Positions 531 to 57,622 of a DNA stretch of 64,000 bases are shown here, in pieces. Each line of letters begins with the position of its first letter. Position 1 is the stretch's first letter. The stretch comes from Lepidodermella squamata (Eukaryota; Animalia; Gastrotricha). A model generated the notes under the pieces. That model was not told where the DNA came from and searched no databases. It worked only from the letters and a program-made list of their open reading frames with translations. The stretch spans positions 1,240,001 to 1,304,000 of the forward strand of contig JBLDXI010000011.1 in the NCBI GenBank assembly GCA_047495785.1, given 5' to 3'. The position numbers were made by a program, and so were the translations under genes.

Positions 531-1144
531 AGCCCATGAACTGCATGTCGTACTTTCCTGTCATCTTTAAAACTACACACTTGAAACCCATGCGTGAACA
601 TATTCGGAAGCAGTTCAACACAACAACGTTCGACGAAGCCTTCCTTCTGATTGCATCGCACAAAATCTACTCCCAGTTCACCATTATGTGCGCATACCTA
701 TGGTACTATCACCGGGATGCTTACTTCTGGACTATCCGAGAGCGCGAGCCTGGTTGGAAGGGCCCATTCGCGCCTGGCCAGGCGAAGACTCCAGCCGAGG
801 TAGGCCTTACTCAATCTCTGTTCGAGATACAACGCCCTTCGCTGGCTATTCATTGGAACTATGAGGCATTCAAAGACGAGCGGAATGCAATGACATCATT
901 ACTAAGAACAGGTGTTTGCTATTCAATGAGTGAAACTGAGAAGCTGAGGACGAAGTTGTGCGACAATCAGCCCAGTCGATGGGACTCGCTTAATACTTAC
1001 GAGTGGACCTTTGAAAGCTATACCTTCATTTGGAACAACACGCTGACATTGGCAGCCCATCGCGAGCGGCTTCAAAGACTTGATCAGTGTCCGCATAGAT
1101 GGAATTTTAGGCCAATGAGAAATCGTTTTCAAAGCGTGCAATAG
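531..1144 (+). CDS. Terminal exon of a putative glycosyltransferase-like protein (upstream exons outside the window or not identified)
   Basis: 202-aa ORF preceded by acceptor ttgaacag at 530. The motifs CMSYFPV..K..HL..MR and SQFxIMCxYxW..HR..Y.W resemble the C-terminal half of an uncharacterised invertebrate GT-like family. Family assignment is from memory. Confidence 0.5.
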
Positions 1145-1804
1145 TGGCGGGGAGTGTTAGTCGGAGAGTGCTTATTTCCTGAGGACAAAACTATAAAATT
1201 AGATATCGCAGTCGGTTCTACTGCGTGTGAGTGCGGTGAGTCTTAGACTCTAAGCTTAAAGAGCTTCATGTGTAAGTACGATGACCCACCAGTGAGCACA
1301 ATGACTCAATAAAACTACAGACAAAAGTGGAATTGGGGCAGGTAGGGTTGGTTTTCCACGTATAGGGGGGTCGTGGGGCAAGCGGGTTGGTATTGGGTGG
1401 ATTGACCCATATGGGATGCGGGTTATTTAACACGCAATGCTAATTATTTTCTAAAGCCCTCAGATTATTATGGTGATAATTTCTCGAGCATCGGAGGTAA
1501 GAAAACAATTTTCTTTATTCTGATCTCAAGTTTAAATTGTACTTGAAAAAGTCGCCGAGATGATGAAAAGCTGGCGGGCAATGTTAGCGGGAGTGAGGGA
1601 GCGGGAGTATACAAGCGGTTTCCCAGTAGATGAGCGGGTTAGCATGTCCTAGTTTTATTTACATAGGCCCTCCGCTGGCTCAAATTAGTTTTTTGGAAAA
1701 TGTCGGAGATGAGGCGGCATTGCCTAGCCGAGGCACTAATATAGTCTCGCCCCATTCGAACAATATGCCGGTTATTTTTAGAGACGCATTGAATCACGCG
1801 CACT

Positions 1805-2075
1805 GGTAATTTTGATCGTCAGTTTGAGCTCATCCAAATCGTTGGCAAACGTTATCTTCGTTCGTTTTTATCAACACCAAAAACTGCATATTTTGGTTCA
1901 TGGCTTTGCGATTGAGACAATAGATCAAGATGATTAAGATGCCGCTATCTCCGTTTGATCTACCAATGCGGGATTCAAAATCAACCTCGATCCTTGATAT
2001 CAGCTATTCAAGGATAGGTTTCTCATCGCCAATAATTCTCGTCACGCTTTTCGCTATCACAACGCCTCAATACAT
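1805..2075 (-). pseudogene. Decayed remnant of a DUF268-like gene
   Basis: gtaattttgatcg...gctcatccaa.tcgttggcaaacgttatc...atcaaca.caaaaactg.atat aligns with indels to 11957-12100 and 28201-28345. The 2020-2070 segment resembles the start-codon region at 12445-12475. Confidence 0.7.
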
Positions 2076-2591: not shown

Positions 2592-5500
2592 TCAATTGAT
2601 TTCTTCGTATTGCCATGATGAGCCGCGGATCCTATCTAATGTGTGTACAAGTTGACAATACAGGCATTGCCTATCAGCAGTATCGTTCTCCACCTTGCCA
2701 AGCTTCAAAGGATGATAAATGTAGTTGGACGGATTGTAAGTATCGTTCACCAGCATTTCGCGTTCATAAACATTCATATTGCCGGCATAACTGATTAACT
2801 GAATCCTTGACTCTGACTTTGATAAGCCCTTCACGATGGTGCCAACTGCCAGCTCCATGTACACTTTATGTTTGGCGAACAGCGTAAACATTTGAATAGC
2901 CTCGGGCACATCTTCAGCAGAAATGAAGAATAAATCCGCGTAAATGTTCCATATCCTTCTGTAACCTAAAATAGATGCAAAAACAGTGAACTATATGGCG
3001 AAAATATCGATTAATATTCCAATTCCCCCTTTTTATTGTATAAGGGAAACAAACTAACTTCGGAGACCGAACTCGAAACTTTGGAACACTAAAGCGAAAC
3101 TTCGGTGACGTTATCAGTGGCAATTTCCGCGCGCGCGCGACATGGGTCGTCCGAAGTTTCTATTGTGTGCGGGCCGAAGATTTTCAGTGCTTCACTACGA
3201 AATTTCCACTTTCTCAAACGCTTGTCATAACCATGAGGTTCTCCGGGCTCATATTTTGACCATAAACAGTCAGAGCCCATTCCAGAAGCCAATTCTCTAC
3301 CGTTAGGTAGCCATGTTGCTCAAAGGTAAAAAAGGCAAGAATTGAAAATCGCTCGAGGTTGCCCTACATCTGCATACTTCTAAACCTAAACTGCATACTC
3401 GCTCAACTTTGGCGAGTATTCGGGCTACCAAAATCGGGAATTTTACTTTGAAACACGCCGATGAACGTGCTCAAAAGAGGAGAAGTGGAGGTAGACACAC
3501 CGTGACTTGAAATGGAGATTTCAATGGGTAATAAACAATAAGAACAATTTCTGAGATTTTTGACCAAATGTGTCGTGTTCCTAACTGAGACGCAACCCAA
3601 GAAAAGGTACAAAATTGAAACAGCGTTTTTTAGAGCAACAGCTGGTGCGTGTTTATTATTGCATAAATTTTGTTTGATAGCGTGAAAAAATTAGGTACGT
3701 TTTCTTGGTATGCGTCTCAATTTAACCATGCTGAATTAGAATTTTGATGAATTGGAATCTCCGGGCACAGTCAAACCATCTAAAGGTGGATTCACTAATG
3801 TGCGACAGGTACGACGCGTGTCGTACCGTCGCATGCGACTGTCGCAGCTCTGTCGCATCAAATCCGCGGACGACAGCCGAGGGATAGTCAAAGTCGTATG
3901 CGCACAAAACAATGACACGCGCGGGCGCTGAGACAGTGTCGCGCGCGGCTAATTTTTATATGAAAGGAAACCAAATTTGCAAAAAAACTTGTTCAACTAA
4001 GTTTTTAACCAGAAAAATCGTTATTTTCGACATCAGTTACCCTATTTCCGCGTATTTTCATCGAAATTTGATAATTTAATTATTTTCACCTAGCACGGCA
4101 CCACCTCGCGGATTATTGAGGGCGCCAACAACTTTTTTATTTAAATTTATTAAGGAAGAAATTCGTAGTCATTTGATGGAGAATTGTTTCAGTTTTAATT
4201 TGGTATAAAAGCCGCCATTGTTTTCGAAATTAGCCTTTTGACATTAGTGCGCGCGGCCACCGTTTTGTTAAAAATTTTGATGTGGTGTTTCGCCTTAGAG
4301 TATTAGTGCGTTGTCTATTCCTCCAGGTTTCGCGCACAAGTACACTGTTATACTTCGATTGCGCGCTTGAAGTGGACCGAACTAGGACGTTGTTCTACCT
4401 GCTGTCGGACGATTCTAAGCTGTCGTGTCGCACACGCGAAATTCCCCCAAAATCGCGCGTGCGATGCGACAGGCCAGGTCCATGCGACAAAATCCATTGT
4501 TTGAGTGCGCGCGCCCTAGTCGAATCTTGTCGCACGCGCACATTGTTCTCTGACTAGCGTTTATGAACACTCGGCGCGACTGTCGTACGAAACGCTGATG
4601 CGACGGTACGACACGCGACAACGTCGGATAGTATATGAACAACGATGCGATTTTCGCACCCGACAGTGCGACGGTCGTATGCGAAATATTCGTATCCGAA
4701 AATTCGCACATTAGTGAATCCACCTTAAAACTACGTTAAATCCATAGAAAACAAGAAAGGTTGACACAGTGCGCGAAGTATTAGGATCCTCGAGCTAGGG
4801 GGTATTTTGGGGCCCAAATTTTATGACCAAAGGGTCTCCCCCCTGTGGTTTTTTGGGGGATTTTCCACTTCGGCTTCGTGAACTGGGGGGTACGATACCC
4901 CTCATTCCCCCCTCCCCCGTACTTCGCGCACTGGGTTGACAATTGACGTTATTCTGTGGCCATATTCAGATTCAGCGTCATGAAATTATGGATTGAACTA
5001 ACCATCACAGCAAGATTCGCTTCCGCCTGCATTCGGCGCTAGATTACGAAAAATGCAGGGGGCAGGGGCTATAAAATCTCATTACTTTAAACTATTTGAT
5101 TTTGATCGCTGTCAGATTATTTGAAAGTTTCCAACTTGTTAAGCATACTTCAATTTATAAATTCACAAAGTGTGAATCCAATAGGATAAAGATTGAGCGA
5201 GTATGCTGTTAAGTTCATTGCTGCCTTTTTTACCTTTGAGAGAAAATTTTGGAGATTTTCCACTAAAACACGCCCCAGAACCTTCCAAAATTAACAAAAC
5301 AGTGGGATAAATTCTCATTTTGTTGTCTGGCCCGGCCGAGCTGGGGGGGATGATCCCTCCATCTGAGAAGTCGCACACTGCCTTTGAGCAACAATGGCTC
5401 GCTAACGATAGGGCAGCCTGCATAAATAGGCCTTACAGGCTGAATTTTTTGTATTCGAGGATGGTTTGGTAAATGAGAACAGTATGAGCCGGTTTTGCTG

Positions 5501-6430
5501 CAAGAACGACGAGTTTTGACTTTCTGATTTTTCTTGAGACGCAATTTCGGCGTCACAATGCAGATTCAGGTAACCTTACCCTATGAGTGCATTACCTGAA
5601 CTTGCGACCGCTAAATTTTTTGCAAACTCGGGATACAAGGTTTCAGCCGCCGTGAAAGCATTACGGGCGTTTCTTTGGTACAAAGTCAATACGTCCCATC
5701 CCGCCGGTTCTGAGCAATCGGCGGCATTGTCCCATAACTTTCCTCTGCAGGTCATTTTCCGATCCACGTCAATGATAGATAACGGCGAGCCCATGAGCCA
5801 ATTTTTGCGGACGTCAAACATTTTCCGCGTGAACTGCCACAGGCTGGGTATCAGATCTTCGGAAATGTGTAAAAACCCGTCGGTGTTTTTGTTATCCACA
5901 ATTTTCCGTATGTCTTCAATGTAGTTGTAAGCTTTAGGCACGCATGAGTAGAATACCGCGCCGGTTGGATGAGTTGGTTCTTCGGTTAATTCGATAAGCG
6001 AAACATTGACAAAAGGTAGCCATTTGCCGTTGTCGTAATCTTTCAGCCTTTGCAAGCCAGTAATGCAAAGCACGACGCGTTGAAAAATCCCCTCGTAAAG
6101 CCGGAACATTTTTGGAATAGCACCGAAATGCGGATTGTTGAACGAGATGATCAGAACAATTTTCTTGAAGTTGACAAGATCTTCCACGCTCTTCGAGTTG
6201 AAAATCTTCAAGTTGCGAGTGGTGAAAAACTTGAGGCAAGCATCACCCTTGGCTTGTTTGTAGTAGGAATCGTTGTTGCAATCAGCAATTGCGTGTTTCC
6301 GCATGATGCTTTGAGGCTCATGCTTCAGGTTCGATAGTAACTGCTTCCAATAGAATGGTAATATCAAGCTGCCTGATACAACGATGATCAGAAAAAGGTA
6401 TCTTGTTTTATTACTCTTAAAAAAGTCCAT
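2592..6430 (-). CDS. STELLO/DUF288 C-terminal-domain-like type II membrane glycosyltransferase-like protein 1; exons 6430-5596 and 2965-2592 (402 aa)
   Basis: N-terminal TM (YLFLIIVVSGSLILPFYW). Motifs KIVLIISFNNPH..IP....LY..IF.RVVLC, GFLHISEDL, YADLFFI and HKVYMELAVGT. Donor CAG|gtaatg and acceptor ttttag|GT join in phase 1. The paralog at 13943-15260 has the same intron position. Confidence 0.8.
3784..4725. mobile_element. PIF/Harbinger-type MITE (942 bp) in intron
   Basis: 22-bp TIR AGGTGGATTCACTAATGTGCGA, 3-bp TSD TAA (3781-3783 and 4726-4728), internal TGTCG/CGACA repeats, no ORF of note. Confidence 0.85.
4767..4933. mobile_element. hAT-type MITE (167 bp)
   Basis: 14-bp TIR CAGTGCGCGAAGTA and perfect 8-bp TSD GGTTGACA (4759-4766 and 4934-4941). 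Confidence 0.9.
5245..5380 (-). mobile_element. Truncated copy of the hAT MITE found intact at 17703-17952
   Basis: Near-identical reverse complement of 17703-17845, ending in TIR TCGCACACTG. Confidence 0.85.
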
Positions 6431-9400
6431 TATAAATCTGGCATATTATACCATAGCTTTCCAGCTTAATCACATATATGATTCATTGGTGAAAAAATCA
6501 ATATGAAAATCCCGAAATTCATATTCCAAGATGGATGTCAAAAGAAAATGCAATCAAATGACACTATTATCCTGAGGATTGTTAAGATTTTGGAAGGATT
6601 GGTTACTCCACTGAGGCGCATATCATGCTTAAGAACGCTAAATGTTAAGTGTAGAGAGTTTTCCGCATGAGTATCCTCTCTGGTTAATCTGATCTCTATG
6701 GCAAAGAAGCACCTACACCAGCGCATTTATCAAGCAGAAACAACGAATAAAACGCCAAATAATGGTAGAAAAAATCAACGTTCATTCGCGAGCGGCTCAT
6801 CAAGAATCTCCCTCGCCTAGCGATCAGACAGGTATCAAACCTAAAGCAACAGCTCACAGCTCAAGTAAAAAATCCAAATCGCTAGGGTTGGCCCTGAATC
6901 TGGCGCCAGCGATGCTACTCACCCGCCTTCGCGTTGTTGACCTCGAAGTCGGAGCATGAGGGGGATCTCACATCCCCTCCAATGAACACCTGGAGGTGAA
7001 GATAAAAGGGTGGGTAGACCAGAGTTGCGCAACACGCAGTCGAGAGAAGAGAAAAAAGAAAAAGGCTGCGCAGCGTCAGCCTCGTGGAACTATCCTGGAT
7101 GTAAATCGGCGACTCAATTATTTGCTATCGAACCTGGGTTTTCTATTATGATTGAGATCAATCTGGATTATTGCCTTAGGTACTTATCACATTTGGAAGC
7201 TTCATTCTTCGATTAGCACCAACCGGAACTTTCACGTCCACTAAGAGAAATTAAACTCGTTTATCTGATGTTGCATTAGGCCATCAGCGTTCTATTTTTT
7301 CATGCTACTTACATTTCAGAGTAATAGTGGTTGCGTATCACATTGAGCAACTTGAAGGCCCGGCTTGTTTAAACTTGACGCCTAAACAGCTAACATGAGA
7401 AACATCAGCCACAAAACGCTCACTACCGTGCGATGACAAGTCTCAATCGCATGAGGCGGGCCTCACTATGTATTTTCATCGCGTCAGCAGCTGAAATATA
7501 TTCGCAATTCGCATGGCCTACGATACCCGGCGGCAAATTGTTCCGCAATTTTGAGATCAAGCATAGCGTAACTGATCGTCGGAATGCGGATGGCGAAATT
7601 ACGATTATGATGGCAACTTCACGGTACAAGGTTGACCTAACCCAACCACCGCATTACGACCCTGCCGCAGATAACTGTCCGATAAAGTGTCGAATTAAAT
7701 ATGGAAAAATATTGTCAGCTAAAGCTTGCTTCGCTTGCAAATGTTAATAATGCACGGGTTTGGAGTTTGGAGGCTAAATATGAATTGGTCAAAAATTACA
7801 TACATTTCTTTCGCTTTTTGACTTTTTGAGAATGGTGGGTAGCGACTTCAGTTGAATGAGCAATCAGGGGTCGCGTAAAAATTAAGTCAAGAACCAATGC
7901 TCAAAACCCTAATTTAATAACCAATCCGATTAAAAGCGCACTCTTAACTTCAATTCTCGATTATAGAGGCTTGCGGCCGGGAAAGTCCTATGTATAGATA
8001 GAGCCCTAGAGGAGGCCAGTTTCGAGGAAAAACTCACATAATAAGACGAGGCGAAGCCGAGGCTTATTATGTGATTTTTCCGAGAAACTAGCCGTATCGT
8101 GGGCTCTATTTTACATAGTACTCGGGAGGAAGCTGTTACCCTCTTCGTTTTACGTGGGTAAATATCCCTAAAAATGCGAAAAATCACATAGGAAGTGCGA
8201 TTTCACGAAAATAAAAAATCCATCTTAAAACTAAAAAGCTGAAAATGTGCAATTTAGTTATTCTGAACCGCTTTGCGCGTTGCTAAAAGCACAAGTTTTC
8301 GGAGTTTCTCATCCAGTTTCTGTGTCTGGAATATAAATAATGAGCGAATGTTTGAGAATCATTCGCTTCAACTCATCTAAGGAGGGATTTCAATTATTTT
8401 GATGATTTCGAAAAATGCACTTTCTATAAGATTTCCAAATAGAAATTGAGGTGACTTCTCGTGATTGCAAGGTGTTGACCTTGAAGTAAACATTATCAAT
8501 CTAGCTTTGCTCTACCGAAATAATCGGGCGATAGGGCGTTCGACTGTCGCAGCACAATATTTCAATGGTTTTTCTCGCTCCGCTCGGTAAAATTAAAGTT
8601 CGATAGCACACTGCCTTCTCGCTACGCTCGACTCATCTCGCTTTGCTCGATCGAAAACCTTGCCCCGTGATGCTCGCTTTGCTCGCGTTTCACGGCGGGG
8701 CAAGGTTTTTGGTCGCTGAAATGCATTGCTCGCTTCGCTCGCGTCTTTTAAAAAATCCAACTTAAAAGTGTTATTATGCAAAATTACTATGTTTACTATG
8801 TTTACTATGTAGCTTCCTCTAGAGTACTATTTTAACATTACATGCGGCCGGTTGAGGGTTCACGAGGCAATGCGGCCGGAAAGGTCGCCAGCCGGCCGCC
8901 ATATTTGACCAGGAGCGAAAATAGTTTAAGAAACACTGATTTAGCGTCATCTTTACGAGCAATCAATATTGCTCGGCGTTTTACACTGTGCTTGTATCAT
9001 TTCAGCACATAATTTCTAAGTTGACTGATGCTATTATGACTGATGCCGGGAACATGTTCAAGTATCGGGATGAGTAGATAATCAAAGATTTCACTTCCTA
9101 AGATCAGTGATTAGATCCGCGATAAAACTCTGATAGTTGATGATATTCAGGTTCATGAGTTGATGGGCATGTCTTGAACTTCGGCAAAAAAGAAACCAAG
9201 GCCCGTGCAATGACTTTCGAATTGCCACGGGACAAGCTGGGATCTGGGATCCTCCGAAAAATTTTCGGTTGCAAAACGCTTCTAGAGCAAATAAGTTATC
9301 CTTCCAGAATCAGGCGACTAAGGATGTGGCATTTTCACTAGCTGCTTATTTTATAACAAGCTTGTTCACGCCAAGTGAAAAAATGTGAATAAATATTAGC

Positions 9401-10999: not shown

Positions 11000-12449
11000 T
11001 CAAATTGAGCAGCCGCGCATGTTCTGGAAAATCATCCACGGCTCATGTGTACCTGATGCGTTTCGACTGCATTCGTTATCTTCTGGAAACATTTCATTCG
11101 CTTCGCCTAGAAACGCGTGATCAATGAATCGCCAACACTCGCTCATCAGTGCGTACCTAGCTGGGCCGTAGACGCGATGCACATTGTGCATTACGAAATC
11201 AACACCAGTTGCCACGCCAAAATACAACAAGCCACCGGGTTTCACCAGGCAGCTGATCCTAGCCATATCCATCAAATCGCCGTCAGGATTCAGAGGATCT
11301 CCATAACGGCCCAATCCGCTGTGCTCTATGCTTGAGTAAGAAATCGCGAAATCGAACCGGCCGTAGAGCTCACCGGAAGCTATTTTCTGCCCAACTTCCC
11401 TAGCGTTGACGTAGCCCAAGTGTTTATGGCCTGGCTTGATAAATTCACTCAGATCGAGGTATTCAATGGTGGTCACGTGACCAGCGCCGGCTCGTAGCAC
11501 TTCCAACTCAGCCCATGGCCAGTATGAACCAATGATTACCCCTCGTTTGCCAGCTATTGAGTATTTTTCAAGCATCAGTCTGAATGGCGCGATCGACCTG
11601 TAGAACGGATAGGAGGCCTGAGTCTTGACCTTCCATAAATCCTTTGTCCCGTGCGCAGAGTTTTCAGCCAGAGACCGCCAGCTATCTCGCGATTCTGCGA
11701 CATCAGCCGCGTTGTCCGGCGTGTATTGCTGTGACAGTTTGAATTCGACCAGGCGATACCAAGGCTGGGTGCGGCGTAAAAATCGTTCCCTTTCGCCCTT
11801 TTTATGCCAGACCTCGGCTAATTTCCCGAACTTCACCGGAACCTCATGCTTTGGAATAACTTCATGAATGGATGTTTTGAGATCTAGGCGCCAGTAATCG
11901 GTCAATTTTGATAGCGGACTGTTTTCCGGATACTGTTTCAAAAAAGTAAATTTGTAGTAATTTTGATCGGCAGTTGTCTTGGCGTTCAGCTCATCCAAGT
12001 TGTTGGCAAACGTTATCCTGCTGTAGTCGTCTGAATCAACAGCAAAAACTGGATATCTTGGATTTTTACTTTGCCATTGTGGGATTTTAGCGATCGAAAT
12101 AGAATTTTGCCATTCGGCTGGAATTAGCGGGCAGTTTGTTGCTTGTGCCGCTTCACTTTTAAAATTCGACAAACAACGGACGCAAAATCCCGGTAATCTG
12201 GAGAGAAACGCAGTTGAATTAGGATGAACTGGAGCGAAAAACAAACCGATTACTGCCGTAGTTTTCGATCGCTGGCGATTCGAATCTATAGAATTTGAAT
12301 AACTTTAGAAGTTTTTTTTAGTAATCGGAAAATGCCTGCCTATTATCACGATTTTCTGCATTATCGTTGGATAAAAGTGACAAAAATAATAAGCCGGCAA
12401 TCGATAAGCTTATAATCACAGCAGATTTCAAGCTAAACAACTGTCTCAT
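11000..12449 (-). CDS. DUF268-family SAM-methyltransferase-like type II membrane protein 1; exons 12449-12340, 12285-12247, 12197-11000 (448 aa)
   Basis: Motifs GVIIGSYWPWAE, VTTIEY, FDFAISYSSIEHSGLGRYGDPLNPDGD, LVKPGGLL and HRVYGPARY. Exon 1 encodes a TM anchor (MRQLFSLKSAVIISLSIAGLLFLSLL). Both introns are phase 2 and conserved in the paralog. Confidence 0.85.
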
Positions 12450-12952
12450 CTTTATGCTAACAACGCCTCAAAAGTCATATCCCACGTTCAGCTCTCTGTG
12501 ACACCTCATTAGAACAATCCTCATTCTGAGAGGTTGTCTACCTTGTCTAAAACGCACACATCATTGACTCCAATCCCCCGTCGCTAAGCTATGAAATATC
12601 GTTAACATCGTTAAATAACTCGGACTTACGCCTGTTAACGTCAGGTTGAAGGTGAGAGGTGACAAGTAAAGTCGTTTGCTTTCGCCTCCTTTATTCACAT
12701 TAAAAAGCCTCTTTTTACTAGTGTCACCCATCACATAGAAATAGCACCACTCGACGTAGTTCTGCTGTAACGCTACCGTATTTGTGTTATTTTTGTGCTA
12801 CCATTTTCGTATAATGAGAAAAGCGTCCGCGGCTGGAGATGGCACCACGCGACAAATGCCGCGTCTGGATCCTCGGGTATCGCGGTCTTGTCTCTAGCGA
12901 AATCAACCAGTGTTTCCAGAGTATAGGCACCGTTATTTCTCATCTGTCACGT

Positions 12953-13942: not shown

Positions 13943-15260
13943 TCAATTGATCTCCTCGAACAATTTGTATTGCCAAGATGGGCCGCGGATCCTATCAAAC
14001 GTGTGTACAATTTGACAATACAGACATTGCCTGTCAGCAGTATCGTTCTCCACCTTGCCAAGCTTCAAAGGATGATAAATGTAGTTGGACGGATTGTAAG
14101 TATCGTTCACCGGCCATTGGCGTTCTTGACCATTTATGGAGCCGGCATAACTTATAAACTGAAGCCTTGATTCGGATCTTGATAAGCCCTTGATGATGGT
14201 GCCAACTGCCAGCTCCATGTACACTTTATGTTTGGCGAACAGCGTAAAAATTTGAAGAGCCTCGGGCACGTCTTCAGCGGAGATGAAGAATAAATCCGCG
14301 TAAATGTTCCATATCCTTCTGTAACCTAAAATAGATGCAAAAGAAGTGAGATTTATGACGAAAATATTGGGAATAATCCAAGTTCCCCATTCACCCATCG
14401 CCCTAGTAATTCGAATTGCATTCACCTGAACTTGCGTCCGCTAAGTTTTTTGCAAACTTGGGATACAAGGTTTCAGCCGCCGTGCAAGCTTCACGGGCAT
14501 TTTCTTGGTACAAAGTCAATACGTCCCATTCCGCAGGTTCTGTGCAATCGGCGGCATTGTCCCATAACTTTCCTCTGCAGGTCATTTTCCGATCCACGTC
14601 AATGATGGATTGCGGCGGGCCCATGAGCCAATTTTTGCGGACGTCAAACGTTTTCCGCGTGAACTGCCACAGGCTGGGTATTAGGTCTTCGGAAACGTGT
14701 AAAAATCCGTCGGTTTCCTTGTTATCCACAATTCTTCGAACGTCTTCGATGTAGTTGTAAGCTTTAGGCACGCATGAGTAGAATACCGCTCCGGTTGGAT
14801 GAGTTGGTTCTTCGGTTAATTCGATAAGCGAAACATTGACAAAAGGTAGCCATTTGCCGTTGTCGTAATCTTTCAGCCTTTGCAAGCCAGTAATGCAAAG
14901 CACGACGCGTTGAAAAATTCCCTCGTAAAGCCGGAACATTTTTGGAATAGCACCGAAATGCGGATTGTTGAACGAGATGATCAGAACAATTTTCTTGAAG
15001 TTGACAAGATCTTCCACGCTTTTCGAGTTGAAAATCTTCAAGTTGCGAGTGGTGAAAAACTTGAGACAAGCATCACCCTTGGCTTGTTTGTAGTAGGAAT
15101 CGTTGTTGCAATCAGCAATTGCGTGTTTCTGCATGATTCTTTGAGGCTCATGCTTCAGGTTCGATACTAACGGCTTCCAATAGATTGATAATAACAGGCT
15201 GGCCGATACAAGGACGATCTGACAAAGGTATCTTATTGCATTACCGCCAAATAGGTTCAT
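13943..15260 (-). CDS. STELLO/DUF288-like protein 2; exons 15260-14426 and 14325-13943 (405 aa)
   Basis: Close paralog of 2592-6430 with a 100-bp phase-1 intron (gtgaat...ttttag) at the same position. Confidence 0.85.
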
Positions 15261-15843
15261 GTTGATATAAGCATGTTACGCCATAGCTCTCCGGCTTAAT
15301 CACATACACGATTCATCGGACAGAAATTATTATAAAATTCATATTCCAAACTGGATGGTAGAAAAAACTCAATCATCCGAATAGCGTTTGTATCCCGAGG
15401 ATTGTTAAGATTTGGAAGGATTGGTCACGATTTCCACGTTTCGCTTCGTTCATACTTAGGAATGGCTGGTCGCACATATACCTAACCCTTCAAGGCCGGG
15501 AACTAGAATACATACTCAAACTGCGGCTATTCACCTGGGTATCACATACTTCCAGATTTACACCAAAAAAAGGTTTAGCAAACGTTTAGACGGCCACTAC
15601 GGCTACGCAACACAGGACACAGGAATTTGAGCCATTTAACGCGACGGGTACACGCAAGACCCGCTCAATTTGATGACGAATGACAATTGCCCGAAAAATG
15701 TTGCCGTTTTCGCTTGTTTTACGATAAAAAATGGCAATATCAAAAAAGAAAGGACTGCGTAATACGTCAGTTCGTTGGTATAAGGTCTGATGAATGATGA
15801 GACCATTGATGAGACCATGATGAGAGCCGGTGGTTGCTCATCA

Positions 15844-16003: not shown

Positions 16004-16341
16004 AGATAGATAAACTCCCTCATCCCACGCTACATGCACTGCCGCTCTTCGCACTCTCTCATGTCCCATTCTTGATCGGTAAATGTAGCTCCGTTTAATC
16101 AATAATATCTTTACGGATACTCAACGCATGATAATCTCTGCCTTGAAAGTCAACTTTGCGTCTTAGATTATAATCTTAAAATATAACAACATTGAAAGAT
16201 ACTTATGTGGACCAGGTTTCTTAATACTTGCCAGATGACTTTTTGAGTGAGACGCAAAGTGGCAGGCAGGATTGTCGACTTCAGGGATTGGTAAGTTCGT
16301 GCTAAAGGTGAAGTACACACCATTCAAATCCCAATCTTCAA

Positions 16342-23059: not shown

Positions 23060-23494
23060 AAGCTGCAAGCAACTTGGGAGCATTCTGGTGAAACGAAACT
23101 TCGATTCGAGTTATCAGTTGCACCTCATCAGTGACACCGGACACGCACTGTTTTAGACTCCCGCGGAAGTTTCTGCGAGTCACCTTACATCTTGTTAGCG
23201 TTAGCGACATTAGCGTTAGGATTGGGTTTATTAGGATTGGTGAATTGGCCCTTCGCACAAGTATTGCATGATTCACAGTATACAAACCGGCTTCTCCGTC
23301 TTTCATTTCGATCAAATGCAGTTGCCGAGGTAGAGTCCCAGTTAATTATTGCTTTAATCACTTTCAAACACGTTACTTCCCTTGTTGCGAAGCTAGTCCC
23401 GTGGAATTATCATCTGGTAGATTTACTAAGCCTACTTTTTCGAGGCTTCTTGGTAGTAATCTTGCTTGCTGTCATCCTATTGGTCTAGAATTAA

Positions 23495-38041: not shown

Positions 38042-38089
38042 GCTAGAAGCTGCCCAAATTTGTGACAGCTTCATGTCATAGAGAAATTC

Positions 38090-40960: not shown

Positions 40961-41745
40961 TTGTGAATACTGAATCAGAACATGCGCCCAGAAAGCACCT
41001 AAAAATCCGATAATTTAAACTCGCGATCAATTTCAGAGTAAAAAAGCTAAAAGCAACACCGTTGATTTATTGTTCGATCAATATATAACATATAACGCAT
41101 TCAATATTGCAACCATGTTTTATGAGACCCATCCATCGTGAAATCTCGTCAATGTGCACTCATGCATGACATTCCTGTGGTGACTTGATAAGGCAAGGTG
41201 AAATCGGCCTCAAATTCGATATCAAAAAGTCTGAGTCGTTTTTTCGTTACGTGCATGTCATGTCTGAGTTCGCGTTGACGAAATTTCACGATGAATCAGT
41301 CTCATGGTGGATCTTTCACAAAGCCATTTGGACTGCACAGACAATTTTGAAGAAGATTAACCGAAGATCCAAGGCATAGGCTTGGAAGGCCGTAACTGCC
41401 AAGCCTATGCATTGAGATAACTTGGACTTTTCGAATTTGCTGGCAAAATCGGGAGTCTTTCCCTATTTTCATCAAGTTGGACCTGAGGTTCAGGACCTTT
41501 CAGGTTGCCTGAGGTTTCCAACTCTAATTTCGTGATTTTGGAGACAAATTTGATAAGGCCAAGTTATCTGAGCAGAACATTATGGTCGAAAAGTTTCGAA
41601 TATTACGTGACCGGAAAGCATTATGCCGGAAAGCCGCTCAAGTACGAATTTCAGAAAATGCGAAAATGCGAATATTCACTCCGATAAATAAAACTGTCAT
41701 TTTTATTGTTTATTGTGGAGAGCGCCAACAGATCTGCTGTACCCT

Positions 41746-49770: not shown

Positions 49771-52249
49771 TCAGCCTTCATTTTTCTTCTGCATAGTAGC
49801 ATAAACGATGCCTATGTTGACGTGTTTGCAATAGATGGAAAATTTCCGCCTTTCCTCTTCAACCAGCCTGCGATCGAAGCGAAATTCACTGAAATTGACA
49901 GGGTGAATCAGCTCTAACGATGTATCGTAAACTTCAGTCAGACGGCGGGTGCGGACTGAGCCGTGTCCCCAATCGTAGGTTAGCCAACTCAGGCCTTGGA
50001 TATCAGCAAAGGGTGCCATTACTCGGAAGGCTGTTATAAGTCCGATTTCCGGCAAAACTCTATGCCTGCAATTGCTTAAACGTTCATTTATTCCGAGGCC
50101 GAAAGATCCAGCTTACCTATCCAGAAGACTCAAAAGTGGCAGTGCATTGTGAAAATACGACTTGGGCATGTAGAATACTTCTGCAGGTGAAAGGCCTAAT
50201 AAGCGGCGCTCTCCACCGGTGGCGGCTGTCAAGTTTTGCTTCACTTCCAGCCAATAATCATTCGACGTGCCGATCAAGTTTGCCTCCTTAGCAGCCAGTT
50301 TGTCGAGATCATCGTAGAAACTCTTTGTCTCATTGCGATTGCGCCTTTGTAGATGCCACAGGTATCGCAATTCGTCATCTTTGCAATCGACAGAATTATT
50401 TCCGCTCATTTTGTGACAGAAGGAACCCTGTTATTAACAAGATTCGATTATAGATGTCGTAATCTAATAAAGCAACTTAGTTGGATTGGGAATCCAACTC
50501 GTTTACTAAGCAAACTAGTTTATAAGGCAATCCAACACAGTTATTGCGCAAAAAATTACCTCCTAAGGAGAGAGGCTCAAGTTTTGTCCGATAAACTCGA
50601 TTGATAGTGTGAAACACTGTTGGTGGAGCCATTGCCATTCGGCGAAATAAAAGAGACAGAATGGTCAAGGAAACAACTCCTTTACGGTTGGAATCTCAAA
50701 AAGTTGCCCTTTTCCTTTACTCATGCAATATTTTGCCATTTAATCCTAATTGAAGTATTGGATTAATTATTGCCGAATATTAAACTAGGTTTATGAGCAA
50801 ACTATTTGGATTCCCAATCCAACTAAATTGCTTATTAGACTACGAGATAGATATTAGGTAAATTTTTCAACTTTCAAGCTAAATTTAGGCTGAACCAAAA
50901 TCCGAAATAGAGCTTGTATCACCAAAGCCTGAATTCGAATATGAAGTTAGAAGTGGCTAACTTGATATGGGTCCATCTTACTTCAATAATAATTGATGGA
51001 ACTGAACAAACTAAAAACTAATGGCAGACCGGCGTAACAGCAAATACCCAAAGCAGCAAACGCGACATAACAGCAGAAAAACGATGCATCTTTTACAATA
51101 GTACAATCTTTTACATAGTAAGTTTTCGCTGTTTTGTCGCGATATATACAAAATTTGCTGTTTTGTCGCATTCGCTGTTCTGCGCAGTTGCTGTTTTGTC
51201 GCCGTGCCAAACTAAAATAACATCCTTCGCTTAGTGGACTTGAAGAATTCCAGAAACTCTCTCGTGAAACTAGTGTTCCGACTCAGTTCAGTTCTCTTGG
51301 GGTAAATCGAGCATTTTGAGCTTAAGTTTTCAAATCATAAAGGGGACCCGTAGAGAAAAAAATTACCAGAGTATGCAAAATTGTTCGAAAATTTCCAATT
51401 AGCTACTGCTCATTTTCTCAGTGACTATAACTTTGTCCTTCGATGGAAAATATGAATCTTAAGACCTAGCAAATAGAAGCTTCTGTCTTGAACTGGCACT
51501 GGACTTTATCATTATTTTTGACCCGGCCAAGAACTCACCGTGTCCACATCAAATTGGTGATCGTGCTCGAGTTTCAGTAGCCAAAGTTTATCAAGCGATT
51601 TGTTGTAAACATCTTTCAAGTTCCAAAAGTTGACTAGCGTGTCATGCGACATTACAAGGGCGCCATCAAATTCGTCGCCAACAGCCTCGATCGCTCGTGG
51701 CAGGCATGCATACGGTGCTCTTTGCTCATCACTATAGTTGACATATAACGCCAACTCGGCTGAAACGGCAATTTCGTCTTGTTGCGCGTGATGCGGCCAA
51801 AACGTTCTAGATGGGCCGCAAAACACTATTTTAGCGAATAAGCCGCGATATATGGATACGAGTTTGCCAGCTGATGCATAGCTAGGGCTGTTGTAGTGTA
51901 AAATCAGCAGAATCTTGCGGAAATTAAGGAATGAATCTATTGGGCTCAATTTCGGCCAAGCGGCTTTTGATGATCTGAAGCCTGTCTGGAATTCGGGATA
52001 ACGATTGCTCATCGTCATCACTCGGCAGTAGTATTTGTAGATGTGTTTCGGTGGACCGCTTTTCGCCATTCTGAATCGTGAGATTACTGAAATCAGTATG
52101 GCTACAGTGATCACGTAAAGCAAAGTCTTCAATGCCGCAGGGAGACATGCTGATTCCATGGCTTCTTGGAAATATAGAAAACAAAAAAGAAACTGAAGTC
52201 CGGCAAGAGCAACACTCAGCGAAGGAATGCGGTTTCCAGCTCTTACCAT
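49771..52249 (-). CDS. STELLO/DUF288-like protein 4; exons 52249-51539, 50427-50117, 50065-49771 (~438 aa; start may be a downstream Met)
   Basis: TM segments and motifs FRKILLILHYNSP, KIVFCGP, GALVMSHDTLVNFW, AEVFYMPK and HRVLPEIG. Donors gtgagt and gtaagc give in-phase joins. Confidence 0.8.
50457..50845. mobile_element. Intronic MITE-like inverted-repeat element
   Basis: Imperfect arms of about 65 bp: TCGTAATCTAATAAAGCAACTTAGTTGGATTGGGAATCCAA / TTGGATTCCCAATCCAACTAAATTGCTTATTAGACTACGA. Confidence 0.7.
51023..51208. repeat. CGACAAAACAGC repeat family, copy 2
   Basis: Reverse-complement homolog of 49398-49577. Confidence 0.7.
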
Positions 52250-52657
52250 TAATTGTCCAGGAAGACTTCCAGCGAAGTGGTGAAACTTAGTCTTTGCTCA
52301 TTTTTTCCACATAATAGCAATTTCTAAGGGGGTTCAGAGAGATAAGACCGTAGATGAAAATTCCTTCAGAAAATATAAAACATCAAGAAGTAAGTTAACA
52401 AAATTGAACCAATTTTGAGATTCGGTCTAGTTTGAACGATAACGTAGCAAAGTATGATAGAATTGCGCTATCTTTCAGCAGAAGTCTATATAAGTATAGC
52501 GGAGTTGTTATATTCAAGTTTTAAATATCGCGATCATTTCATTTCGCCATGTCTCACGTCTCAATCCCGACTAAATATAACCAATCCTTCAAGACATTGG
52601 CAGATTTTTCTGAAACCGGCCGCACTGTCGGGAAATTTTGCATTTAATTTATAACGA

Positions 52658-53484: not shown

Positions 53485-53611
53485 AAATAGACCTAAAATA
53501 GACTTAAAATAGACTCCGCAACGAGAGGGAAATGGACTGGGACAATCCCCTTTCTGCTTCTCATTCTCAAGCACTTTAATCTGCCCATCAAGTTGAGTAA
53601 GTCTGTTTGAA

Positions 53612-56600
53612 ATGTTTTCACTCAAATGCCTTCTAACTATTAGCTCATTTTTCCTACTGGCCGGCTATTTTCAGGCCGCATCGAAACCTCTCGCCGAAAT
53701 AGGTCGCATGTATTGGAAATTCTATTTTAATGACTCATTACCGCCGTTGCGCGTTTACAAGACTTTCTCGCCAACTCGGTGCAATTTCACAATTTCAAGC
53801 CCTGAAAAACAGACGACAGAATCGGACTGTATCATCCTACTCTGGGGATCGTGGTTTGGGGTACCCCTGTGGAGAAATTTTTACGAGCCTTCAAGTAACA
53901 TGTCGGCCTACGTCATCGCTAACAATTGCATTATTTCAAGCGATCGAAATATCCTCGACAGAGCTAACGTTGTTGTCTTTCATCAGCCTGATATAAATAC
54001 GCTGGACTTGCCAACAATTCGATTTTCGTGGCAACGCTGGGCTTTTCAAATGCTCGAATCGCCTATCAATGCTGAGCTTAATTTTGGGTTTTACCCGGAA
54101 AATCTTCCGAGAATAAATTCGTTGGCTTTCAATTGGACGATCACTTATTCTAGAAAAGCTGATTTTCAATGGCCGTATGGTCGGATTATTACGAAGAGGC
54201 CAAACCAGGAAAACGCGACAATTCCGAGAAATATTACCGAATTTTCGGAAAGGTTCCACTTGAGGAGATACGATGGTTGTTGGATTTCAAGTCATTGCTC
54301 GACTCAATCGAGACGAGAAGAGATTGTCAAAACGTTGGCAGATTTAGGCGTATCGATTGGGGTAATATTATCATTCCTAAAAGCTATTATAACAGTCCGG
54401 CGGCTAAGTTTCCTCCAAGCATGCACTCTGATTGTTCGTTGAACGACAACTTTCGAATTTCCCGGCGGTTTTTACGTCAAAATTGATCAAATTTGGCATC
54501 GATTGAATATGAGATTCTAGCTTGAAAATCGTAAGGCGAATTTGTTACGTGCATTCAAGATTATTCACTATTCTTGTGTGCGCGATTTAACAATAATTCA
54601 GGCGAAAAATTGTGAGCAAAAATAGGCGTCACATTTTTCGAGCGAGAATCCAATCGATGACAAATTTGATGGATTTTATTTTGACCTAAAAGCCGCCGGG
54701 AAATTCAAAAGCTAGCCTTTGTAATTGCCGCGCGGTAATTCACTAGAAAAGCATGTGCAGGCACGGCTTTGGCTTAAGCGCGCGAAATTTTGTAATTAAC
54801 TCATAGTACTCTGGGGGAAGCTACATTATCTTAGTGAACTTGGTGAACGCTATGTACTCTGTTGGTGTGTTAAAAGTAAGGTGGATGTGTTAAAAGTTGA
54901 AATCGAAGCAGATTGCAGCTGACGAAAACGATAAGTGCGAGCGCAACACGGGGCAAGGGTTTCCATCGAGCGCGGCGAGAAAGCTATGAATTTTTCCAAC
55001 TCCTGCGACGAGCGTAGCAAGAAAAAACTTTTTGCTGAATTATTCTCAAAAATTCGCGCGCTCATTTTGTTATGCTTCAGACATAGAAACCGGCTTAGAA
55101 AATCCGAAAATTTTTTGCTTTTAGCCATGCGGTCCGGAATAACAAGATTGCGTTTTATTTTTGAGATATATTTTTATTTTCGTAAAATTGTGATTTTACT
55201 ATCACTCTATTCACTCTTCCTATGTGATTTTGTGCATTTTTATGGATAAACAGGGCCAGGGCTGCAAAAAGTGTTTTTCTTCCCACCACCAAGCTTAAAT
55301 CTTCCCAAATCGCCTCCGCCTCATTTCAACCCGTTTTAACGTGTTTCCACCACGCACCTTCATGTTGCGCGTTACTAGATTGAAAAATAAACATAGCGAG
55401 CACGGAAAATCAACGATAGCCAAGGGTTGATCATTTGAGGACTTAAAAGCACCCAATAAAGCAGAAAATAATTATCGAGCGCAGCGAGCCGAAATTTGAT
55501 AATTCTGGCTATATTTCATGCTTTAAACGCCTATAATCACTATTTTTGGGTATTTATTCTTGATAATTTATGGGAAAACCCGTCAATTACCAAAAAAACT
55601 AGTGTTTTTTAAAGACTGATATTGCCCAATTTACGATTTTACATAGTCATTACAACTTGGTAACTATCAGGAATTTGGGAAAACAAATTAGATATTCGGA
55701 ATCAGCGCGAAAAATTAGGGTAGTCTGCAAATTTGCGCACAGTTAGCAAGCAAAATCGGGAAGAAATAGGTCGTCAAACGTTTCGCGGATTGTAGTGCGC
55801 ACACACGCGCGTGCTTTCAAATGTGTGTGTGCGCGCACCAGCCTTCCACGCGCTCCACCGTGCGCATTTGGGAAGCGCGCATGAGCGGGGAAGCCGTGTG
55901 TAGCGTGTGATACGTGCGCGCGCGCTCTCTCACGCGCGCACAAGTTAATTTCTTTACATTCCCATTTCTTCTCCAATTTTCACGATAGCCGTGCGCAAAC
56001 ATGAAGTCTACCCTCAATTTTCGCGCTGATTCCGAATATCTAATTTGTTTTCCCAAATTCCAAGCCAGTAAGAAGTTATGAGGAGAAGTGGGAAATCAAT
56101 ATAGTTCGCACGCATATCAAACATATTAGACTTATGAATAGTGAATAGGATGTGGACTTGATAAATCGCGAGAAGCGCTAAATAGCAAGGTGAGTTGTAG
56201 TCGTTTCATTGTTACAAATTTGACCAAAAATTGACATTTAGACGCATATTTATCAAAAAATCGCCTCCGGCGGAAACTTCCCACAAAAACAGGGTTTCAA
56301 CTTCGAAAATTTCCCACCACCAAGGGTGGCATGGTGGTACACTTTTTGCAGCCCTGTGGATAAAACCACACGTAAAACGAAGAGGGTAACTGCTTCCTCC
56401 TGAGTGCTAAGTACATTAGAGCCCACGATCCGGCTAGTTTCTCGGAAAAATCCTTGCAACTGGCCTCCTCATAATTAACGTGCAATCGCGCGCACAAAGC
56501 GTCAGCCAATTGGAGGCCTGAGAATGTGTTTCCTATAACCAGATATCCAATCCTATATCCAAAGGGGTGCGCACAAACAAGAGCAATGATTTAACGCCGT

Positions 56601-57622
56601 GGAAATGTTTTTCCTTATTTCTCATTACTATTCCATTTTTAAACGTTCACAAACTCGAATGGTTTTGTATTTGCCAAGCTTTAAGGGGCCTCTGACGCAG
56701 GCTGAAAAAATGTTGGACAATAGTGAGATTCGATCGCGTGTAATCAGTCACCGAGAAATGACGCTCAACAGCTACGCCAACACGCTTTCGATATAAAGTG
56801 AGGCTTAAAACAGCTAATATGCGTGTAGCTTTTTCTTTGAATGGAAAAATTTGAAATCTCCCATCCAAGAAAGAATAATAACGAAATATCTTCTGTTGCT
56901 CAGTGGTAAAAATCGCTGAGTGATGGACAGGCGACCGAGGTTCCAACCCCATCTCGTTCAATATTTTTTTAGTCTAATACAAGAGACCTCTCAAAACATT
57001 GGTTTACCACAGTAATAGTAATAAGAAATAAAGCCGTGCAAATTTTTTTGTGTTTTATGCGCAATGAAATGACTGTTTGTGCGCACCCGTTTATACATGA
57101 CTTTAAAAGCCCAATTTAATTTAGAAATGCGGTCACTGCTCGGAGACTGGCGAAACAGATTGTCAACATGGCCTCGTCGATTTTTACAAAAACTGCCGTT
57201 TCATTTTTGCGTTTGAAAATTCGTTATGCGAGGATTATGTCTCGGAGAAGTTTTTTCAAGCTCTTGAAATGTCGAAATCTACCGGCTCGATTTTAGTTGT
57301 TTACGGATCTGCAAATTACGAATCGATTTTGCCACCGGAATACTATTTCAACGTCAGAAGCTTTGCTAATTTGTCAGTGTTAGCCGATCAGTTATTAGAG
57401 TTTCGACGGCCAAGCATGCAGCGAGTCGATGAAATGTTATCGTGGCAAAATTCCTATGAAGTTTTCGGAGACGACTGGACGTACTGGGCTTTTCGCGATA
57501 TCTGTGGCCGAGTAAAGCGATGTAGGCACCAAAACTCATCATCAACAACTGATTGCGGCGATAAAGTTCACCGCCATGTTACCGAATCGACAGGAAAATG
57601 TTTCGAGCCTCAAATTCATTAA
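53612..57622 (+). CDS. Alpha-1,3-fucosyltransferase (GT10); exons 53612-54361 and 57125-57622 (415 aa)
   Basis: Signal anchor. Motifs IILLW, VVVFH, QRWAFQMLESP, FNWTITYSRKADF..PYG, WISSHC, G|KCG and the GT10 motif FIFAFENSLCEDYVSEKF. Confidence 0.9.
54451..54710. mobile_element. Intronic inverted-repeat element
   Basis: Imperfect arms of about 55 bp: GAATTTCCCGGCGG..TTT...CAAATTTG.CATCGATTG and its reverse complement. Confidence 0.6.
55670..56061. mobile_element. Intronic MITE-like element with a GCGC/ACAC-rich centre
   Basis: Arms of about 70 bp: GGAATTTGGGAAAACAAATTAGATATTCGGAATCAGCGCGAAAA / TTTTCGCGCTGATTCCGAATATCTAATTTGTTTTCCCAAATTCC. Confidence 0.75.
56896..56956 (+). repeat. tRNA-derived (SINE-like) fragment
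   Basis: A-box-like GCTCAGTGGTA and B-box-like GGTTCCAACCC at tRNA spacing. No good acceptor or anticodon stem. Confidence 0.4.

What the first reader, a model, noticed from the sequence alone, without database searches (positions are those of the whole stretch)
531..57622. Pathway-like cluster of 14 glycan-modifying genes: candidate locus for a methylated, fucosylated, galactosylated glycan
Seen: five unrelated enzyme families are interleaved in about 58 kb (4 STELLO/DUF288-like, 2 DUF268 plus a remnant, 3 GT92, 3 GT37/23-type FucT, 1 GT10 FucT), plus one further GT-like exon. Almost all have N-terminal type II anchors and 0-2 introns. Known: GT92 members are beta-1,4-galactosyltransferases (plant galactan; nematode GALT-1 caps core fucose), GT10 adds alpha-1,3 Fuc, GT37/23/11 add alpha-1,2 or 1,6 Fuc, and DUF268 has a SAM-MTase-like fold. 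Animal glycosylation genes are normally dispersed, and tandem arrays usually hold one family. Inference: this is a biosynthetic gene cluster for one secreted or surface glycan (mucus, cuticle, egg coat), with backbone, branching and O-methyl capping enzymes together.
Basis: partly seen in the sequence, partly recalled or inferred. Interest (0 to 1): 0.88.

Follow-up and report, generated by a model that had tools for sequence, protein, structure and literature searches.

The report
Co-regulated animal glycan-enzyme gene cluster
In a microscopic invertebrate (probably the gastrotrich Lepidodermella), twelve intact genes from five unrelated families of sugar-adding and methyl-adding Golgi-type enzymes lie together and share one short DNA motif in front of them, so they probably switch on together to decorate one cell type's surface or secreted glycans; similar clusters are known in the worm C. 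elegans, and the chemistry is untested.

Summary
The cluster is real. It holds 12 intact genes (3 STELLO-C-domain-like, 2 DUF268, 3 GT92, 3 GT37-like and 1 GT10 fucosyltransferase), a frameshifted fourth STELLO-like copy, a 123-nt DUF268 remnant and a further GT-like exon. Paralogue pairs show dN/dS 0.24-0.43; one gene is spliced in a public run.

New here: the motif MCAATCCY lies 48-166 nt before the start codon of 10 of the 12 genes, and further up, before a candidate 5' intron, in the other two. An unbiased search gave p=2e-13; 0 of 1084 control sets reached it. This supports co-regulation, unless the motif is a general promoter element, which I could not test genome-wide.

Corrections: two GT92 lack the acidic DxD motif; the STELLO-like proteins match only the C-terminal part; mixed orientation excludes an operon; no nucleotide-sugar supply genes were seen. 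"One glycan" is not shown.

Mixed glycogene clusters with GT92, fucosyltransferases and DUF268 are published for C. elegans (PMC7614267), and this scan noted several others on other pieces of this genome. Verdict: new variant of a known kind.

The parts
531..1144 (+). Last exon of a probable GT-like gene (DUF6492-like); its 5' part is not in the window
   Evidence: AG acceptor at 529-530; Atlas 0.96 to DUF6492-containing clusters but low recognition score; no Pfam hit. Lead only.
1806..1914 (-). DUF268-gene remnant from the stem region, with 10-nt and 4-nt deletions
   Evidence: BLASTN 73% over 123 columns, E 5e-17 to both DUF268 genes
2592..6430 (-). STL1: STELLO C-terminal-domain-like type II protein, 402 aa; exons 5596-6430 and 2592-2965
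   Evidence: 88% identical to STL2, dN/dS 0.43
6575..6602 (-). Motif pair MCAATCCY, 146 and 166 nt before STL1
11000..12449 (-). DUF1: DUF268 type II protein, 448 aa; exons 12340-12449, 12247-12285, 11000-12197; first intron modelled as GC-AG
   Evidence: Pfam; model
12514..12577 (+). Motif pair 66 and 122 nt before DUF1
13943..15260 (-). STL2: STELLO C-terminal-domain-like type II protein, 405 aa; exons 14426-15260 and 13943-14325
   Evidence: Atlas 0.88 to a 310-aa STELLO cluster, a lead only
15398..15424 (-). Motif pair 139 and 158 nt before STL2
16268..16291 (-). Motif pair 57 and 73 nt before GT92a
16342..17571 (+). GT92a, 409 aa, one exon; acidic motif replaced (SINR for DVDE)
   Evidence: Pfam; alignment; Atlas 0.96 GT92; almost no cover in run X2
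18274..19518 (-). GT92b, 414 aa, one exon; acidic motif replaced as in GT92a; inverted copy
   Evidence: dN/dS 0.27 against GT92a; covered by run X2
19573..19595 (+). Motif 71 nt before GT92b, plus a TAATCC variant at 55 nt
20685..20692 (-). Motif 66 nt before FUT1
20752..22309 (+). FUT1: GT37-like fucosyltransferase, 467 aa; exons 20752-21688 and 21843-22309
   Evidence: a 1019-nt contig of run X2 skips exactly the 154-nt intron, while DNA run X1 retains it
23218..23240 (-). Motif pair 83-98 nt before a candidate first exon of GT92c
23316..25580 (+). GT92c, DVDE motif intact; 447 aa from ATG 24237, or 461 aa with candidate exon 23316-23329 spliced to 24209, which gives a longer anchor
   Evidence: Pfam; match to galactan synthase 8d3t E 0.006; candidate exon (not confirmed by RNA; other phase-compatible candidates exist)
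27250..28711 (-). DUF2: DUF268 type II protein, 451 aa; exons 28590-28711, 28496-28537, 27250-28441; class I SAM-methyltransferase fold
   Evidence: dN/dS 0.26 against DUF1
28785..28808 (+). Motif pair 75 and 91 nt before DUF2
29336..31748 (-). FUT2: GT37-like fucosyltransferase, 486 aa; exons 31392-31748 and 29336-30439
31795..31842 (-). Motif pair 48 and 88 nt before FUT2
32484..32491 (+). Motif 76 nt before FUT3
32561..36471 (+). FUT3: GT37-like fucosyltransferase, 481 aa; exons 32561-33527 and 35993-36471; 44% identical to FUT1, same intron position
38635..40998 (-). STL3: STELLO C-terminal-domain-like copy with a 1-nt frameshift near 40909 and no anchor exon found; probable pseudogene or assembly indel
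49771..52159 (-). STL4: STELLO C-terminal-domain-like type II protein, 408 aa; exons 51539-52159, 50117-50427, 49771-50065
   Evidence: dN/dS 0.24 against STL3
52562..52588 (+). Motif plus near match 403-423 nt before STL4, followed by a candidate 5'-UTR intron or outron ending at a pyrimidine tract just before the ATG
   Evidence: intron inferred
53542..53549 (+). Motif 69 nt before GT10
53612..57622 (+). GT10 alpha-1,3/4-fucosyltransferase-like, about 415 aa; exons 53612-54361 and 57125-57622 (donor site chosen by consensus)
   Evidence: Pfam; models; motif FAFENSxxxDYVSEK present

Best explanation
A co-regulated glycan-tailoring gene battery. Each gene has its own promoter with one or two copies of MCAATCCY (either orientation), read by one unidentified transcription factor, so the set is switched on in one secretory cell type or state (motif shown; function inferred). 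The products are type II secretory-pathway proteins. By family precedent GT92c adds beta-galactose, the three GT37-like enzymes add alpha-1,2-fucose to galactose, GT10 adds alpha-1,3-fucose, and the DUF268 pair uses SAM to O-methylate terminal sugars; the STELLO-C-like proteins are probable glycosyltransferases of unknown donor; GT92a/b are probably non-catalytic partners or non-canonical enzymes (all inferred). The output is most likely a family of related fucosylated, galactosylated, methylated glycans on surface or secreted glycoproteins, not one defined polymer. The cluster grew in place by single-gene duplications of different ages, with some copies decaying.
For: Motif: 16 of 22 non-coding copies lie in the 200 nt before the 12 start codons, 6% of non-coding DNA; 23 in the window against 7.4 expected; an unbiased search on 10 promoters, with one of each alignable pair removed and starts fixed beforehand, returns it at p=2e-13, with 0 of 1084 control sets reaching that. 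It is not part of a shared mobile element. Promoter similarity between paralogues ends a few bases beyond the distal motif, and DUF1/DUF2 both carry two copies although their upstream DNA does not align. The two genes without a proximal copy have one before a candidate 5' intron. No exact copy lies before the two peptide genes, the gene at 62489 or the NB-ARC/ankyrin gene. Selection: dN/dS 0.24-0.43 at dS 0.15, 0.32, 0.61, 1.13. Expression: FUT1 spliced and GT92b covered in run X2. Folds and motifs. DUF268 lies next to a GT11 fucosyltransferase in Auanema, DUF273/GT34 in Mesorhabditis and among GT2/GT4/TylF/FkbM-type genes in two bacteria.
Against: The motif was found after the fact and could be a general CCAAT-like promoter element of this genome; only about four non-glyco genes served as in-window controls, and a near match lies 321 nt before the NB-ARC gene. 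GT92a has the motif pair yet almost no cover in run X2 while GT92b and FUT1 are covered (contigs cannot rank expression). DUF268 has no glycosyltransferase neighbour in four other animal loci (Rotaria twice, Brachionus, Lepeophtheirus). No activity is tested for any of these proteins. No orthologous cluster in a relative could be reached.
Confidence: 0.6

Rival explanations
1. A neighbourhood of fast-evolving secretory gene families. Glycogenes are heavily expanded in this genome and accumulate by local duplication in the same regions as immune-like and Cys-rich genes; the motif is a common promoter element, and the genes serve different glycans.
For: Many other mixed glycosyltransferase clusters and GT37-like genes noted on other pieces of this genome (unchecked notes); an NB-ARC/ankyrin gene, a FLYWCH element and a Cys-rich gene sit inside the span; duplications of different ages, one frameshifted copy and one remnant; at 10-20% glycogenes 6 families of 11 would be expected in 0.6-22 windows.
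Against: Nine deep lineages together stay unlikely at up to 10%; exact motif absent before the in-window non-glyco genes; other clusters of this genome are noted with a different shared motif (unchecked), which suggests cluster-specific motifs.
Confidence: 0.2
2. A strict biosynthetic gene cluster for one glycan: GT92c and STELLO-like enzymes build a backbone, GT37-like and GT10 enzymes branch it, DUF268 caps it with O-methyl groups.
For: Shared motif; the predicted activities fit in series, since plant GT37 fucosylates galactose and GT92 supplies galactose (established knowledge); DUF268-fucosyltransferase adjacency recurs with a non-homologous family in Auanema.
Against: Several paralogues per step; two GT92 lack the acidic motif; no nucleotide-sugar or SAM supply genes seen in the window; no initiating enzyme identified; no conservation of the set in a relative shown.
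Confidence: 0.15
3. A block acquired by horizontal transfer from a microbe or protist and then domesticated.
For: The named relatives found for the GT37-like family are Marchantia and Basidiobolus; the closest are unnamed environmental eukaryote contigs; no named animal among 20 looked up. The DUF268 pair groups (100/98) with two proteins from a Rhytidocystis transcriptome.
Against: Spliceosomal introns, GC3 0.43-0.54 like the neighbour's 0.56, 25-47% identity to all outside hits, GT92 and DUF268 present in nematodes, rotifers and arthropods, and the DUF268 pair does not group with the bacterial rows. The Rhytidocystis sample came from polychaete gut and may hold host RNA. Ancient single-gene transfers remain possible.
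Confidence: 0.05

Closest known systems
C. elegans glycogene clusters C13A2/F07G11, K06H6/ZK488, T15D6/T09E11 (PMC7614267)
   Same: Physically clustered genes of unrelated CAZy families including GT92 and alpha-1,2-fucosyltransferases, with putative methyltransferases and DUF268; correlated expression reported; pathway function unproven. Some C13A2 genes also lack the GT92 cysteines or acidic motif (PMC2727005).
   Different: Fucosyltransferases here are plant-type GT37-like and GT10, not GT11; STELLO-C-like genes present; no nucleotide-sugar transporter or nuclear receptor gene seen; mixed orientation with separate promoters instead of the operons proposed there; a shared cis-motif is shown here and I found none reported there; probably another phylum.
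Plant GT37 (AtFUT1, AtFUT4) acting after galactosyltransferases, and GT92 galactan synthase GALS1
   Same: Best solved-structure matches of the FucT family and of GT92c; GxGxR, IGxxxR and DxxxL...S motifs kept.
   Different: Below the Pfam cut-off, 25-37% identity even to the closest hits; acceptor unknown; clustering of the plant genes with each other was not examined.
Arabidopsis STELLO1/2 and Pfam PF03385 (DUF288)
   Same: Homology to model positions 181-307 of 387; type II anchor.
   Different: About 405 aa against 771 aa; no GT75-related N-terminal part. In Arabidopsis DD205-206 and DVD297-299 are required and DD591-592 is not (PMC4906169); by my mapping only the latter region is present here.
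[quoted passage not shown]
   Same: GT92 domain with the two conserved cysteines; surface-glycan role is the model for the inferred function (PMC2727005, PMC11836678).
   Different: GT92a/b lack the acidic motif, whose mutation is null in BAH-1, yet are under purifying selection.
Bacterial polysaccharide clusters containing DUF268
   Same: DUF268 beside glycosyltransferases and sugar O-methyltransferase families.
   Different: No operon structure, no sugar-nucleotide enzymes, and membrane-anchored luminal DUF268.

Membership tests
Nematode-type glycogene cluster | Several unrelated Golgi-type glycan-modifying families physically adjacent | tested here: met
Nematode-type glycogene cluster | Products 300-600 aa with one N-terminal hydrophobic segment | tested here: met
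   402-486 aa, hydropathy 1.3-2.6; weak in two
Nematode-type glycogene cluster | Correlated expression of members | tested here: inconclusive
   shared motif; contigs of one RNA-like run cover 2 of 3 genes tested
Operon (SL trans-spliced polycistron) | Same strand, short intergenic distances, one promoter | tested here: not met
   four divergent and four convergent junctions, gaps 0.6-4.6 kb; motif before each gene
Biosynthetic gene cluster for one product | Consecutive reactions on one product | not testable with these tools
   needs enzymology and glycomics
Biosynthetic gene cluster for one product | Gene set conserved together in relatives | tested here: inconclusive
   no related locus reached; DUF268 next to a GT in 2 of 6 animal loci
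Biosynthetic gene cluster for one product | Precursor supply or transport genes included | tested here: not met
   none among the long frames scanned in the window; the cluster may extend left of base 1
GT92 | Pfam PF01697 above cut-off | tested here: met
   33.6, 42.9, 63.6 bits against 23
GT92 | Acidic DxD(E) motif and two conserved cysteines | tested here: inconclusive
   cysteines in all three; acidic motif in GT92c only, SINR in GT92a/b
GT37 | Best profile match and alpha-2/alpha-6/O-FucT motifs | tested here: met
   AtFUT4 4e-13 against FUT8 3e-05; motifs
GT37 | Pfam PF03254 above cut-off | tested here: not met
   16 and 13 bits against 23.4; hence 'GT37-like'
GT37 | Alpha-1,2-fucosyl transfer to galactose | not testable with these tools
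   no assay
GT10 | N- and C-terminal Pfam domains and the alpha-1,3-FucT motif | tested here: met
DUF268 / class I methyltransferase | Pfam PF03269 and Rossmann-like SAM-binding fold | tested here: met
   domain pLDDT mostly above 85; top 50 Foldseek hits are SAM-dependent methyltransferase-fold proteins, best E 1e-08
DUF268 / class I methyltransferase | O-methylation of glycans | not testable with these tools
   context only
STELLO | GT75-related domain with the essential DxD motifs | tested here: not met
   matches start at model position 181 or later of 387; essential residues in PMC4906169; mapping of positions is my inference
STELLO | Homology to PF03385 | tested here: inconclusive
   27.1 and 22.9 bits against 27.8; Atlas 0.88; structure model unusable, pLDDT 47

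The most novel reading that the evidence does not exclude
An animal regulon-plus-cluster: unrelated Golgi enzymes, including plant-type GT37 fucosyltransferases and DUF268 as a so far unidentified glycan O-methyltransferase, were gathered at one locus under one dedicated cis-element to build a single methylated fuco-galactan coat, convergently with the nematode glycoclusters but with different fucosyltransferase families.
Probability: 0.2. Interest if true: 0.8.

Novelty: new variant of a known kind. Interest (0 to 1): 0.57.

Why it matters
Methylated fucose and galactose are common on invertebrate glycans, and the C. elegans glycomics paper states that the methyltransferases and alpha-1,2-fucosyltransferases remain unidentified and that it is unknown whether glycoclusters are pathways (PMC7614267). 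This locus gives two anchored DUF268 proteins with a methyltransferase fold beside candidate acceptor-building enzymes, and a sharp shared motif that makes co-regulation directly testable by a genome scan. If it holds in a spiralian, functional clustering of glycogenes arose or persisted in two distant animal lineages.

Tried and rejected
Exact look-up of four window proteins found none in the collection. Word-index homologue search gave 3 hits for GT92c and none for FUT2. Two metagenome scans for related loci found nothing, so synteny in relatives is untested. DUF268 had no sequence-level PDB match; the fold came from prediction. The STELLO-like model was too poor to use (pLDDT 47; weak GT-A hits mixed with noise). 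Operon reading rejected on orientation and spacing. One block duplication rejected: dS of pairs ranges from 0.15 to saturation; only remnant-STL1 and DUF1-STL2 may be a two-gene repeat. Amplification chimera rejected. Presence of the plain 6-mer CAATCC in 8 of 10 promoters is not significant against all 6-mers (31% of control sets have some 6-mer that often; 1 of 2000 for GC-balanced ones); the flanked motif is. A mobile-element origin of the motif rejected. No paper with the motif and glycosylation genes was found, so the factor is unidentified; the AATCCY end recalls K50 homeodomain sites and RCCAATC recalls NF-Y, from memory only. No clean spliced model for the Cys-rich gene. The WormBook cluster chapter was not held.

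Full report
Source. The window is compact animal DNA (about 42% GC) with short spliceosomal introns. An earlier scan note suggested a gastrotrich. The scan lists 1993 windows on 147 pieces; the published Lepidodermella squamata assembly has 122.8 Mb, 157 contigs, 43.3% GC and 28,377 gene models (PMC11660948). This fits, but the identity is inferred, not shown.

Observation. Pfam confirms DUF268 twice, GT92 three times and both halves of GT10; STELLO and XG_FTase hits are below cut-off. All-against-all comparison links four STELLO-like and three FucT-like genes. Spliced models give 12 intact proteins of 402-486 aa with N-terminal hydrophobic segments. The fourth STELLO-like copy has a 1-nt deletion relative to its paralogue and no anchor exon was found; the DUF268 remnant is 123 nt with two deletions. 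The exon at 531-1144 resembles DUF6492-type proteins only by language-model features. An NB-ARC/ankyrin gene, a FLYWCH element and a Cys-rich secreted gene interrupt the span. Under independent placement nine deep lineages together are unlikely unless about a fifth of all genes are glycogenes; the family-level count is less decisive (assumed fractions).

Family assignments. The FucT family profile (41 sequences) matches plant GT37 best, then FUT8 and NodZ; all three genes keep the GxGxR, IGxxxR and DWxxL motifs. Its named relatives are Marchantia and Basidiobolus, and the closest hits are unnamed environmental eukaryote contigs. GT92c keeps DVDE and matches galactan synthase weakly; GT92a/b have SINR there, and in BAH-1 a change in this motif is null (PMC2727005), yet the pair has dN/dS 0.27, so it is maintained, probably as non-catalytic partners. 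The DUF268 model is confident over its domain and matches class I SAM methyltransferases. The STELLO-like proteins match only model positions 181-307 of 387; in Arabidopsis the essential aspartates lie in the N-terminal part and DD591-592 is dispensable (PMC4906169), so by my mapping they are stand-alone relatives of the C-terminal part, not STELLO proper.

History and expression. Paralogue pairs have dS 0.15, 0.32, 0.61, 1.13 and saturation, with dN/dS 0.24-0.43: repeated single-gene duplication under purifying selection. Orientation is mixed with gaps of 0.6-4.6 kb, so this is not an operon. In public run X2 one contig skips exactly the 154-nt FUT1 intron and others cover GT92b, while GT92a is nearly uncovered; DNA run X1 retains the intron and covers every bin with 1-2% differences.

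The shared motif. MCAATCCY occurs 48-166 nt before the start codon of STL1, DUF1, STL2, GT92a, GT92b, FUT1, DUF2, FUT2, FUT3 and GT10, often twice, in either orientation. The window has 23 copies against 7.4 expected; 16 of the 22 non-coding copies fall in these promoters, 6% of non-coding DNA. Because it was seen after the fact, I repeated the search over all patterns of this shape on 10 promoters with start codons fixed earlier and one of each alignable pair removed: it is the top pattern at p=2e-13, and none of 1084 random sets reached it (best 3e-10). The two exceptions account for three more copies: a pair 83-98 nt before a phase-compatible five-codon exon that lengthens the GT92c anchor, and a copy plus near match before a candidate 5' intron of STL4; both are unconfirmed. 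Paralogous promoters stop aligning a few bases past the distal copy, and the sites are not in a shared repeat. No exact copy precedes the in-window non-glyco genes; the core alone lies 71 nt before the Cys-rich secreted gene, a possible co-expressed substrate. The control set is small, so a general promoter element is not excluded.

Context elsewhere. DUF268 lies next to a GT11 fucosyltransferase in Auanema, next to DUF273/GT34 in Mesorhabditis and within polysaccharide-type clusters in two bacteria, but has no such neighbour in Rotaria (twice), Brachionus or Lepeophtheirus. These six animal loci were picked from named hits and are not a sample. The window's DUF268 pair groups with two proteins of a Rhytidocystis pertsovi transcriptome taken from polychaete gut; host RNA or transfer cannot be told apart. 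The tree used 72 of the 120 listed hits (all named rows, the best hits and every third other row), was midpoint-rooted and was not tested with a clade test, so it names no donor.

Mechanism. Shown: gene anatomy, folds, selection, splicing of one gene, the motif. Inferred: one factor activates the battery in one secretory cell type; GT92c galactosylates, GT37-like enzymes add alpha-1,2-fucose to galactose, GT10 adds alpha-1,3-fucose, DUF268 methylates terminal sugars, STELLO-C-like proteins add an unknown sugar. I give 0.6 to a co-regulated battery making related glycans, 0.2 to a family-rich neighbourhood with a generic motif, 0.15 to a strict one-product pathway and 0.05 to block transfer.

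Comparison and verdict. C. elegans clusters with GT92, GT11, GT31, GT14, methyltransferases and DUF268 are published, with correlated expression and no proof of consecutive function (PMC7614267). This scan also noted several mixed clusters on other pieces of this genome and clusters of other genes with a different shared motif; these notes are unchecked. The kind is therefore known. The variant is new as far as I could search: a probable gastrotrich, plant-type fucosyltransferases, stand-alone STELLO-C domains, a conserved DxD-less GT92 pair, and cis-evidence for co-regulation. Interest 0.57.

Noticed in passing
window 42070-42706 (-): Secreted Cys/Thr/Pro/Ser-rich gene with the motif core 71 nt upstream; downstream exons do not join cleanly. 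A phase-1 donor at 42120 is compatible with the STL3 acceptor at 40999, so a fusion or captured exon is possible.
   Followed up: partly
window 44310-48696 (-): Large gene with a hydrophobic segment, a probable NTPase region and many ankyrin repeats, between STL3 and STL4; a near match to the motif lies at 49017.
   Followed up: partly
window 12286-12339 and 28538-28589 (-): The first intron of both DUF268 genes is in frame with a GC donor (GCAGG), conserved in both copies; not checked in RNA.
   Followed up: partly
window 400-407: An exact motif copy 135 nt before the ATG at 536 of the GT-like exon; it may belong to an intron or to a gene outside the window.
   Followed up: no
window 36999-38950: FLYWCH-containing frame (37002-37871, -) with a nearby frame resembling a transposase or reverse-transcriptase fragment; probable mobile element right after STL3.
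   Followed up: no
window 7984-8122, 12953-13150, 22847-23059, 54450-54711, 55670-56061, 60971-61325: Palindromic MITE-like elements; several long introns of the glycogenes (2.4-2.8 kb) hold such inserts while the paralogues have 100-154 nt introns.
   Followed up: partly
window 15925-15965, 57878-57915, 60197-60225: Short interstitial TTAGGG-type repeat runs, at 57878 and 60197 ending a repeated element.
   Followed up: no
window 57536-57716, 57916-58020, 58494-58580: The 3' end of the GT10 gene is duplicated in two pieces at 98-100% identity just downstream, flanking an insertion.
   Followed up: no
window 59207-62017 (-): Two tandem small prepropeptide-like genes; used here only as controls without the motif.
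   Followed up: no
P0113, P0114: Closest DUF268 relatives, one with a type II anchor and the same Cys-containing stem, come from the Rhytidocystis pertsovi transcriptome GHVQ (apicomplexan from polychaete gut): parasite gene or host RNA is open.
   Followed up: partly
L005:8739-13302 and L006:4920-10921: DUF268 genes lie near C-type lectin genes in both Auanema and Brachionus.
   Followed up: no
L001:10001-16604: The best FUT2 relative sits in a compact environmental eukaryote contig about 4 kb from a GT31 galactosyltransferase.
   Followed up: no
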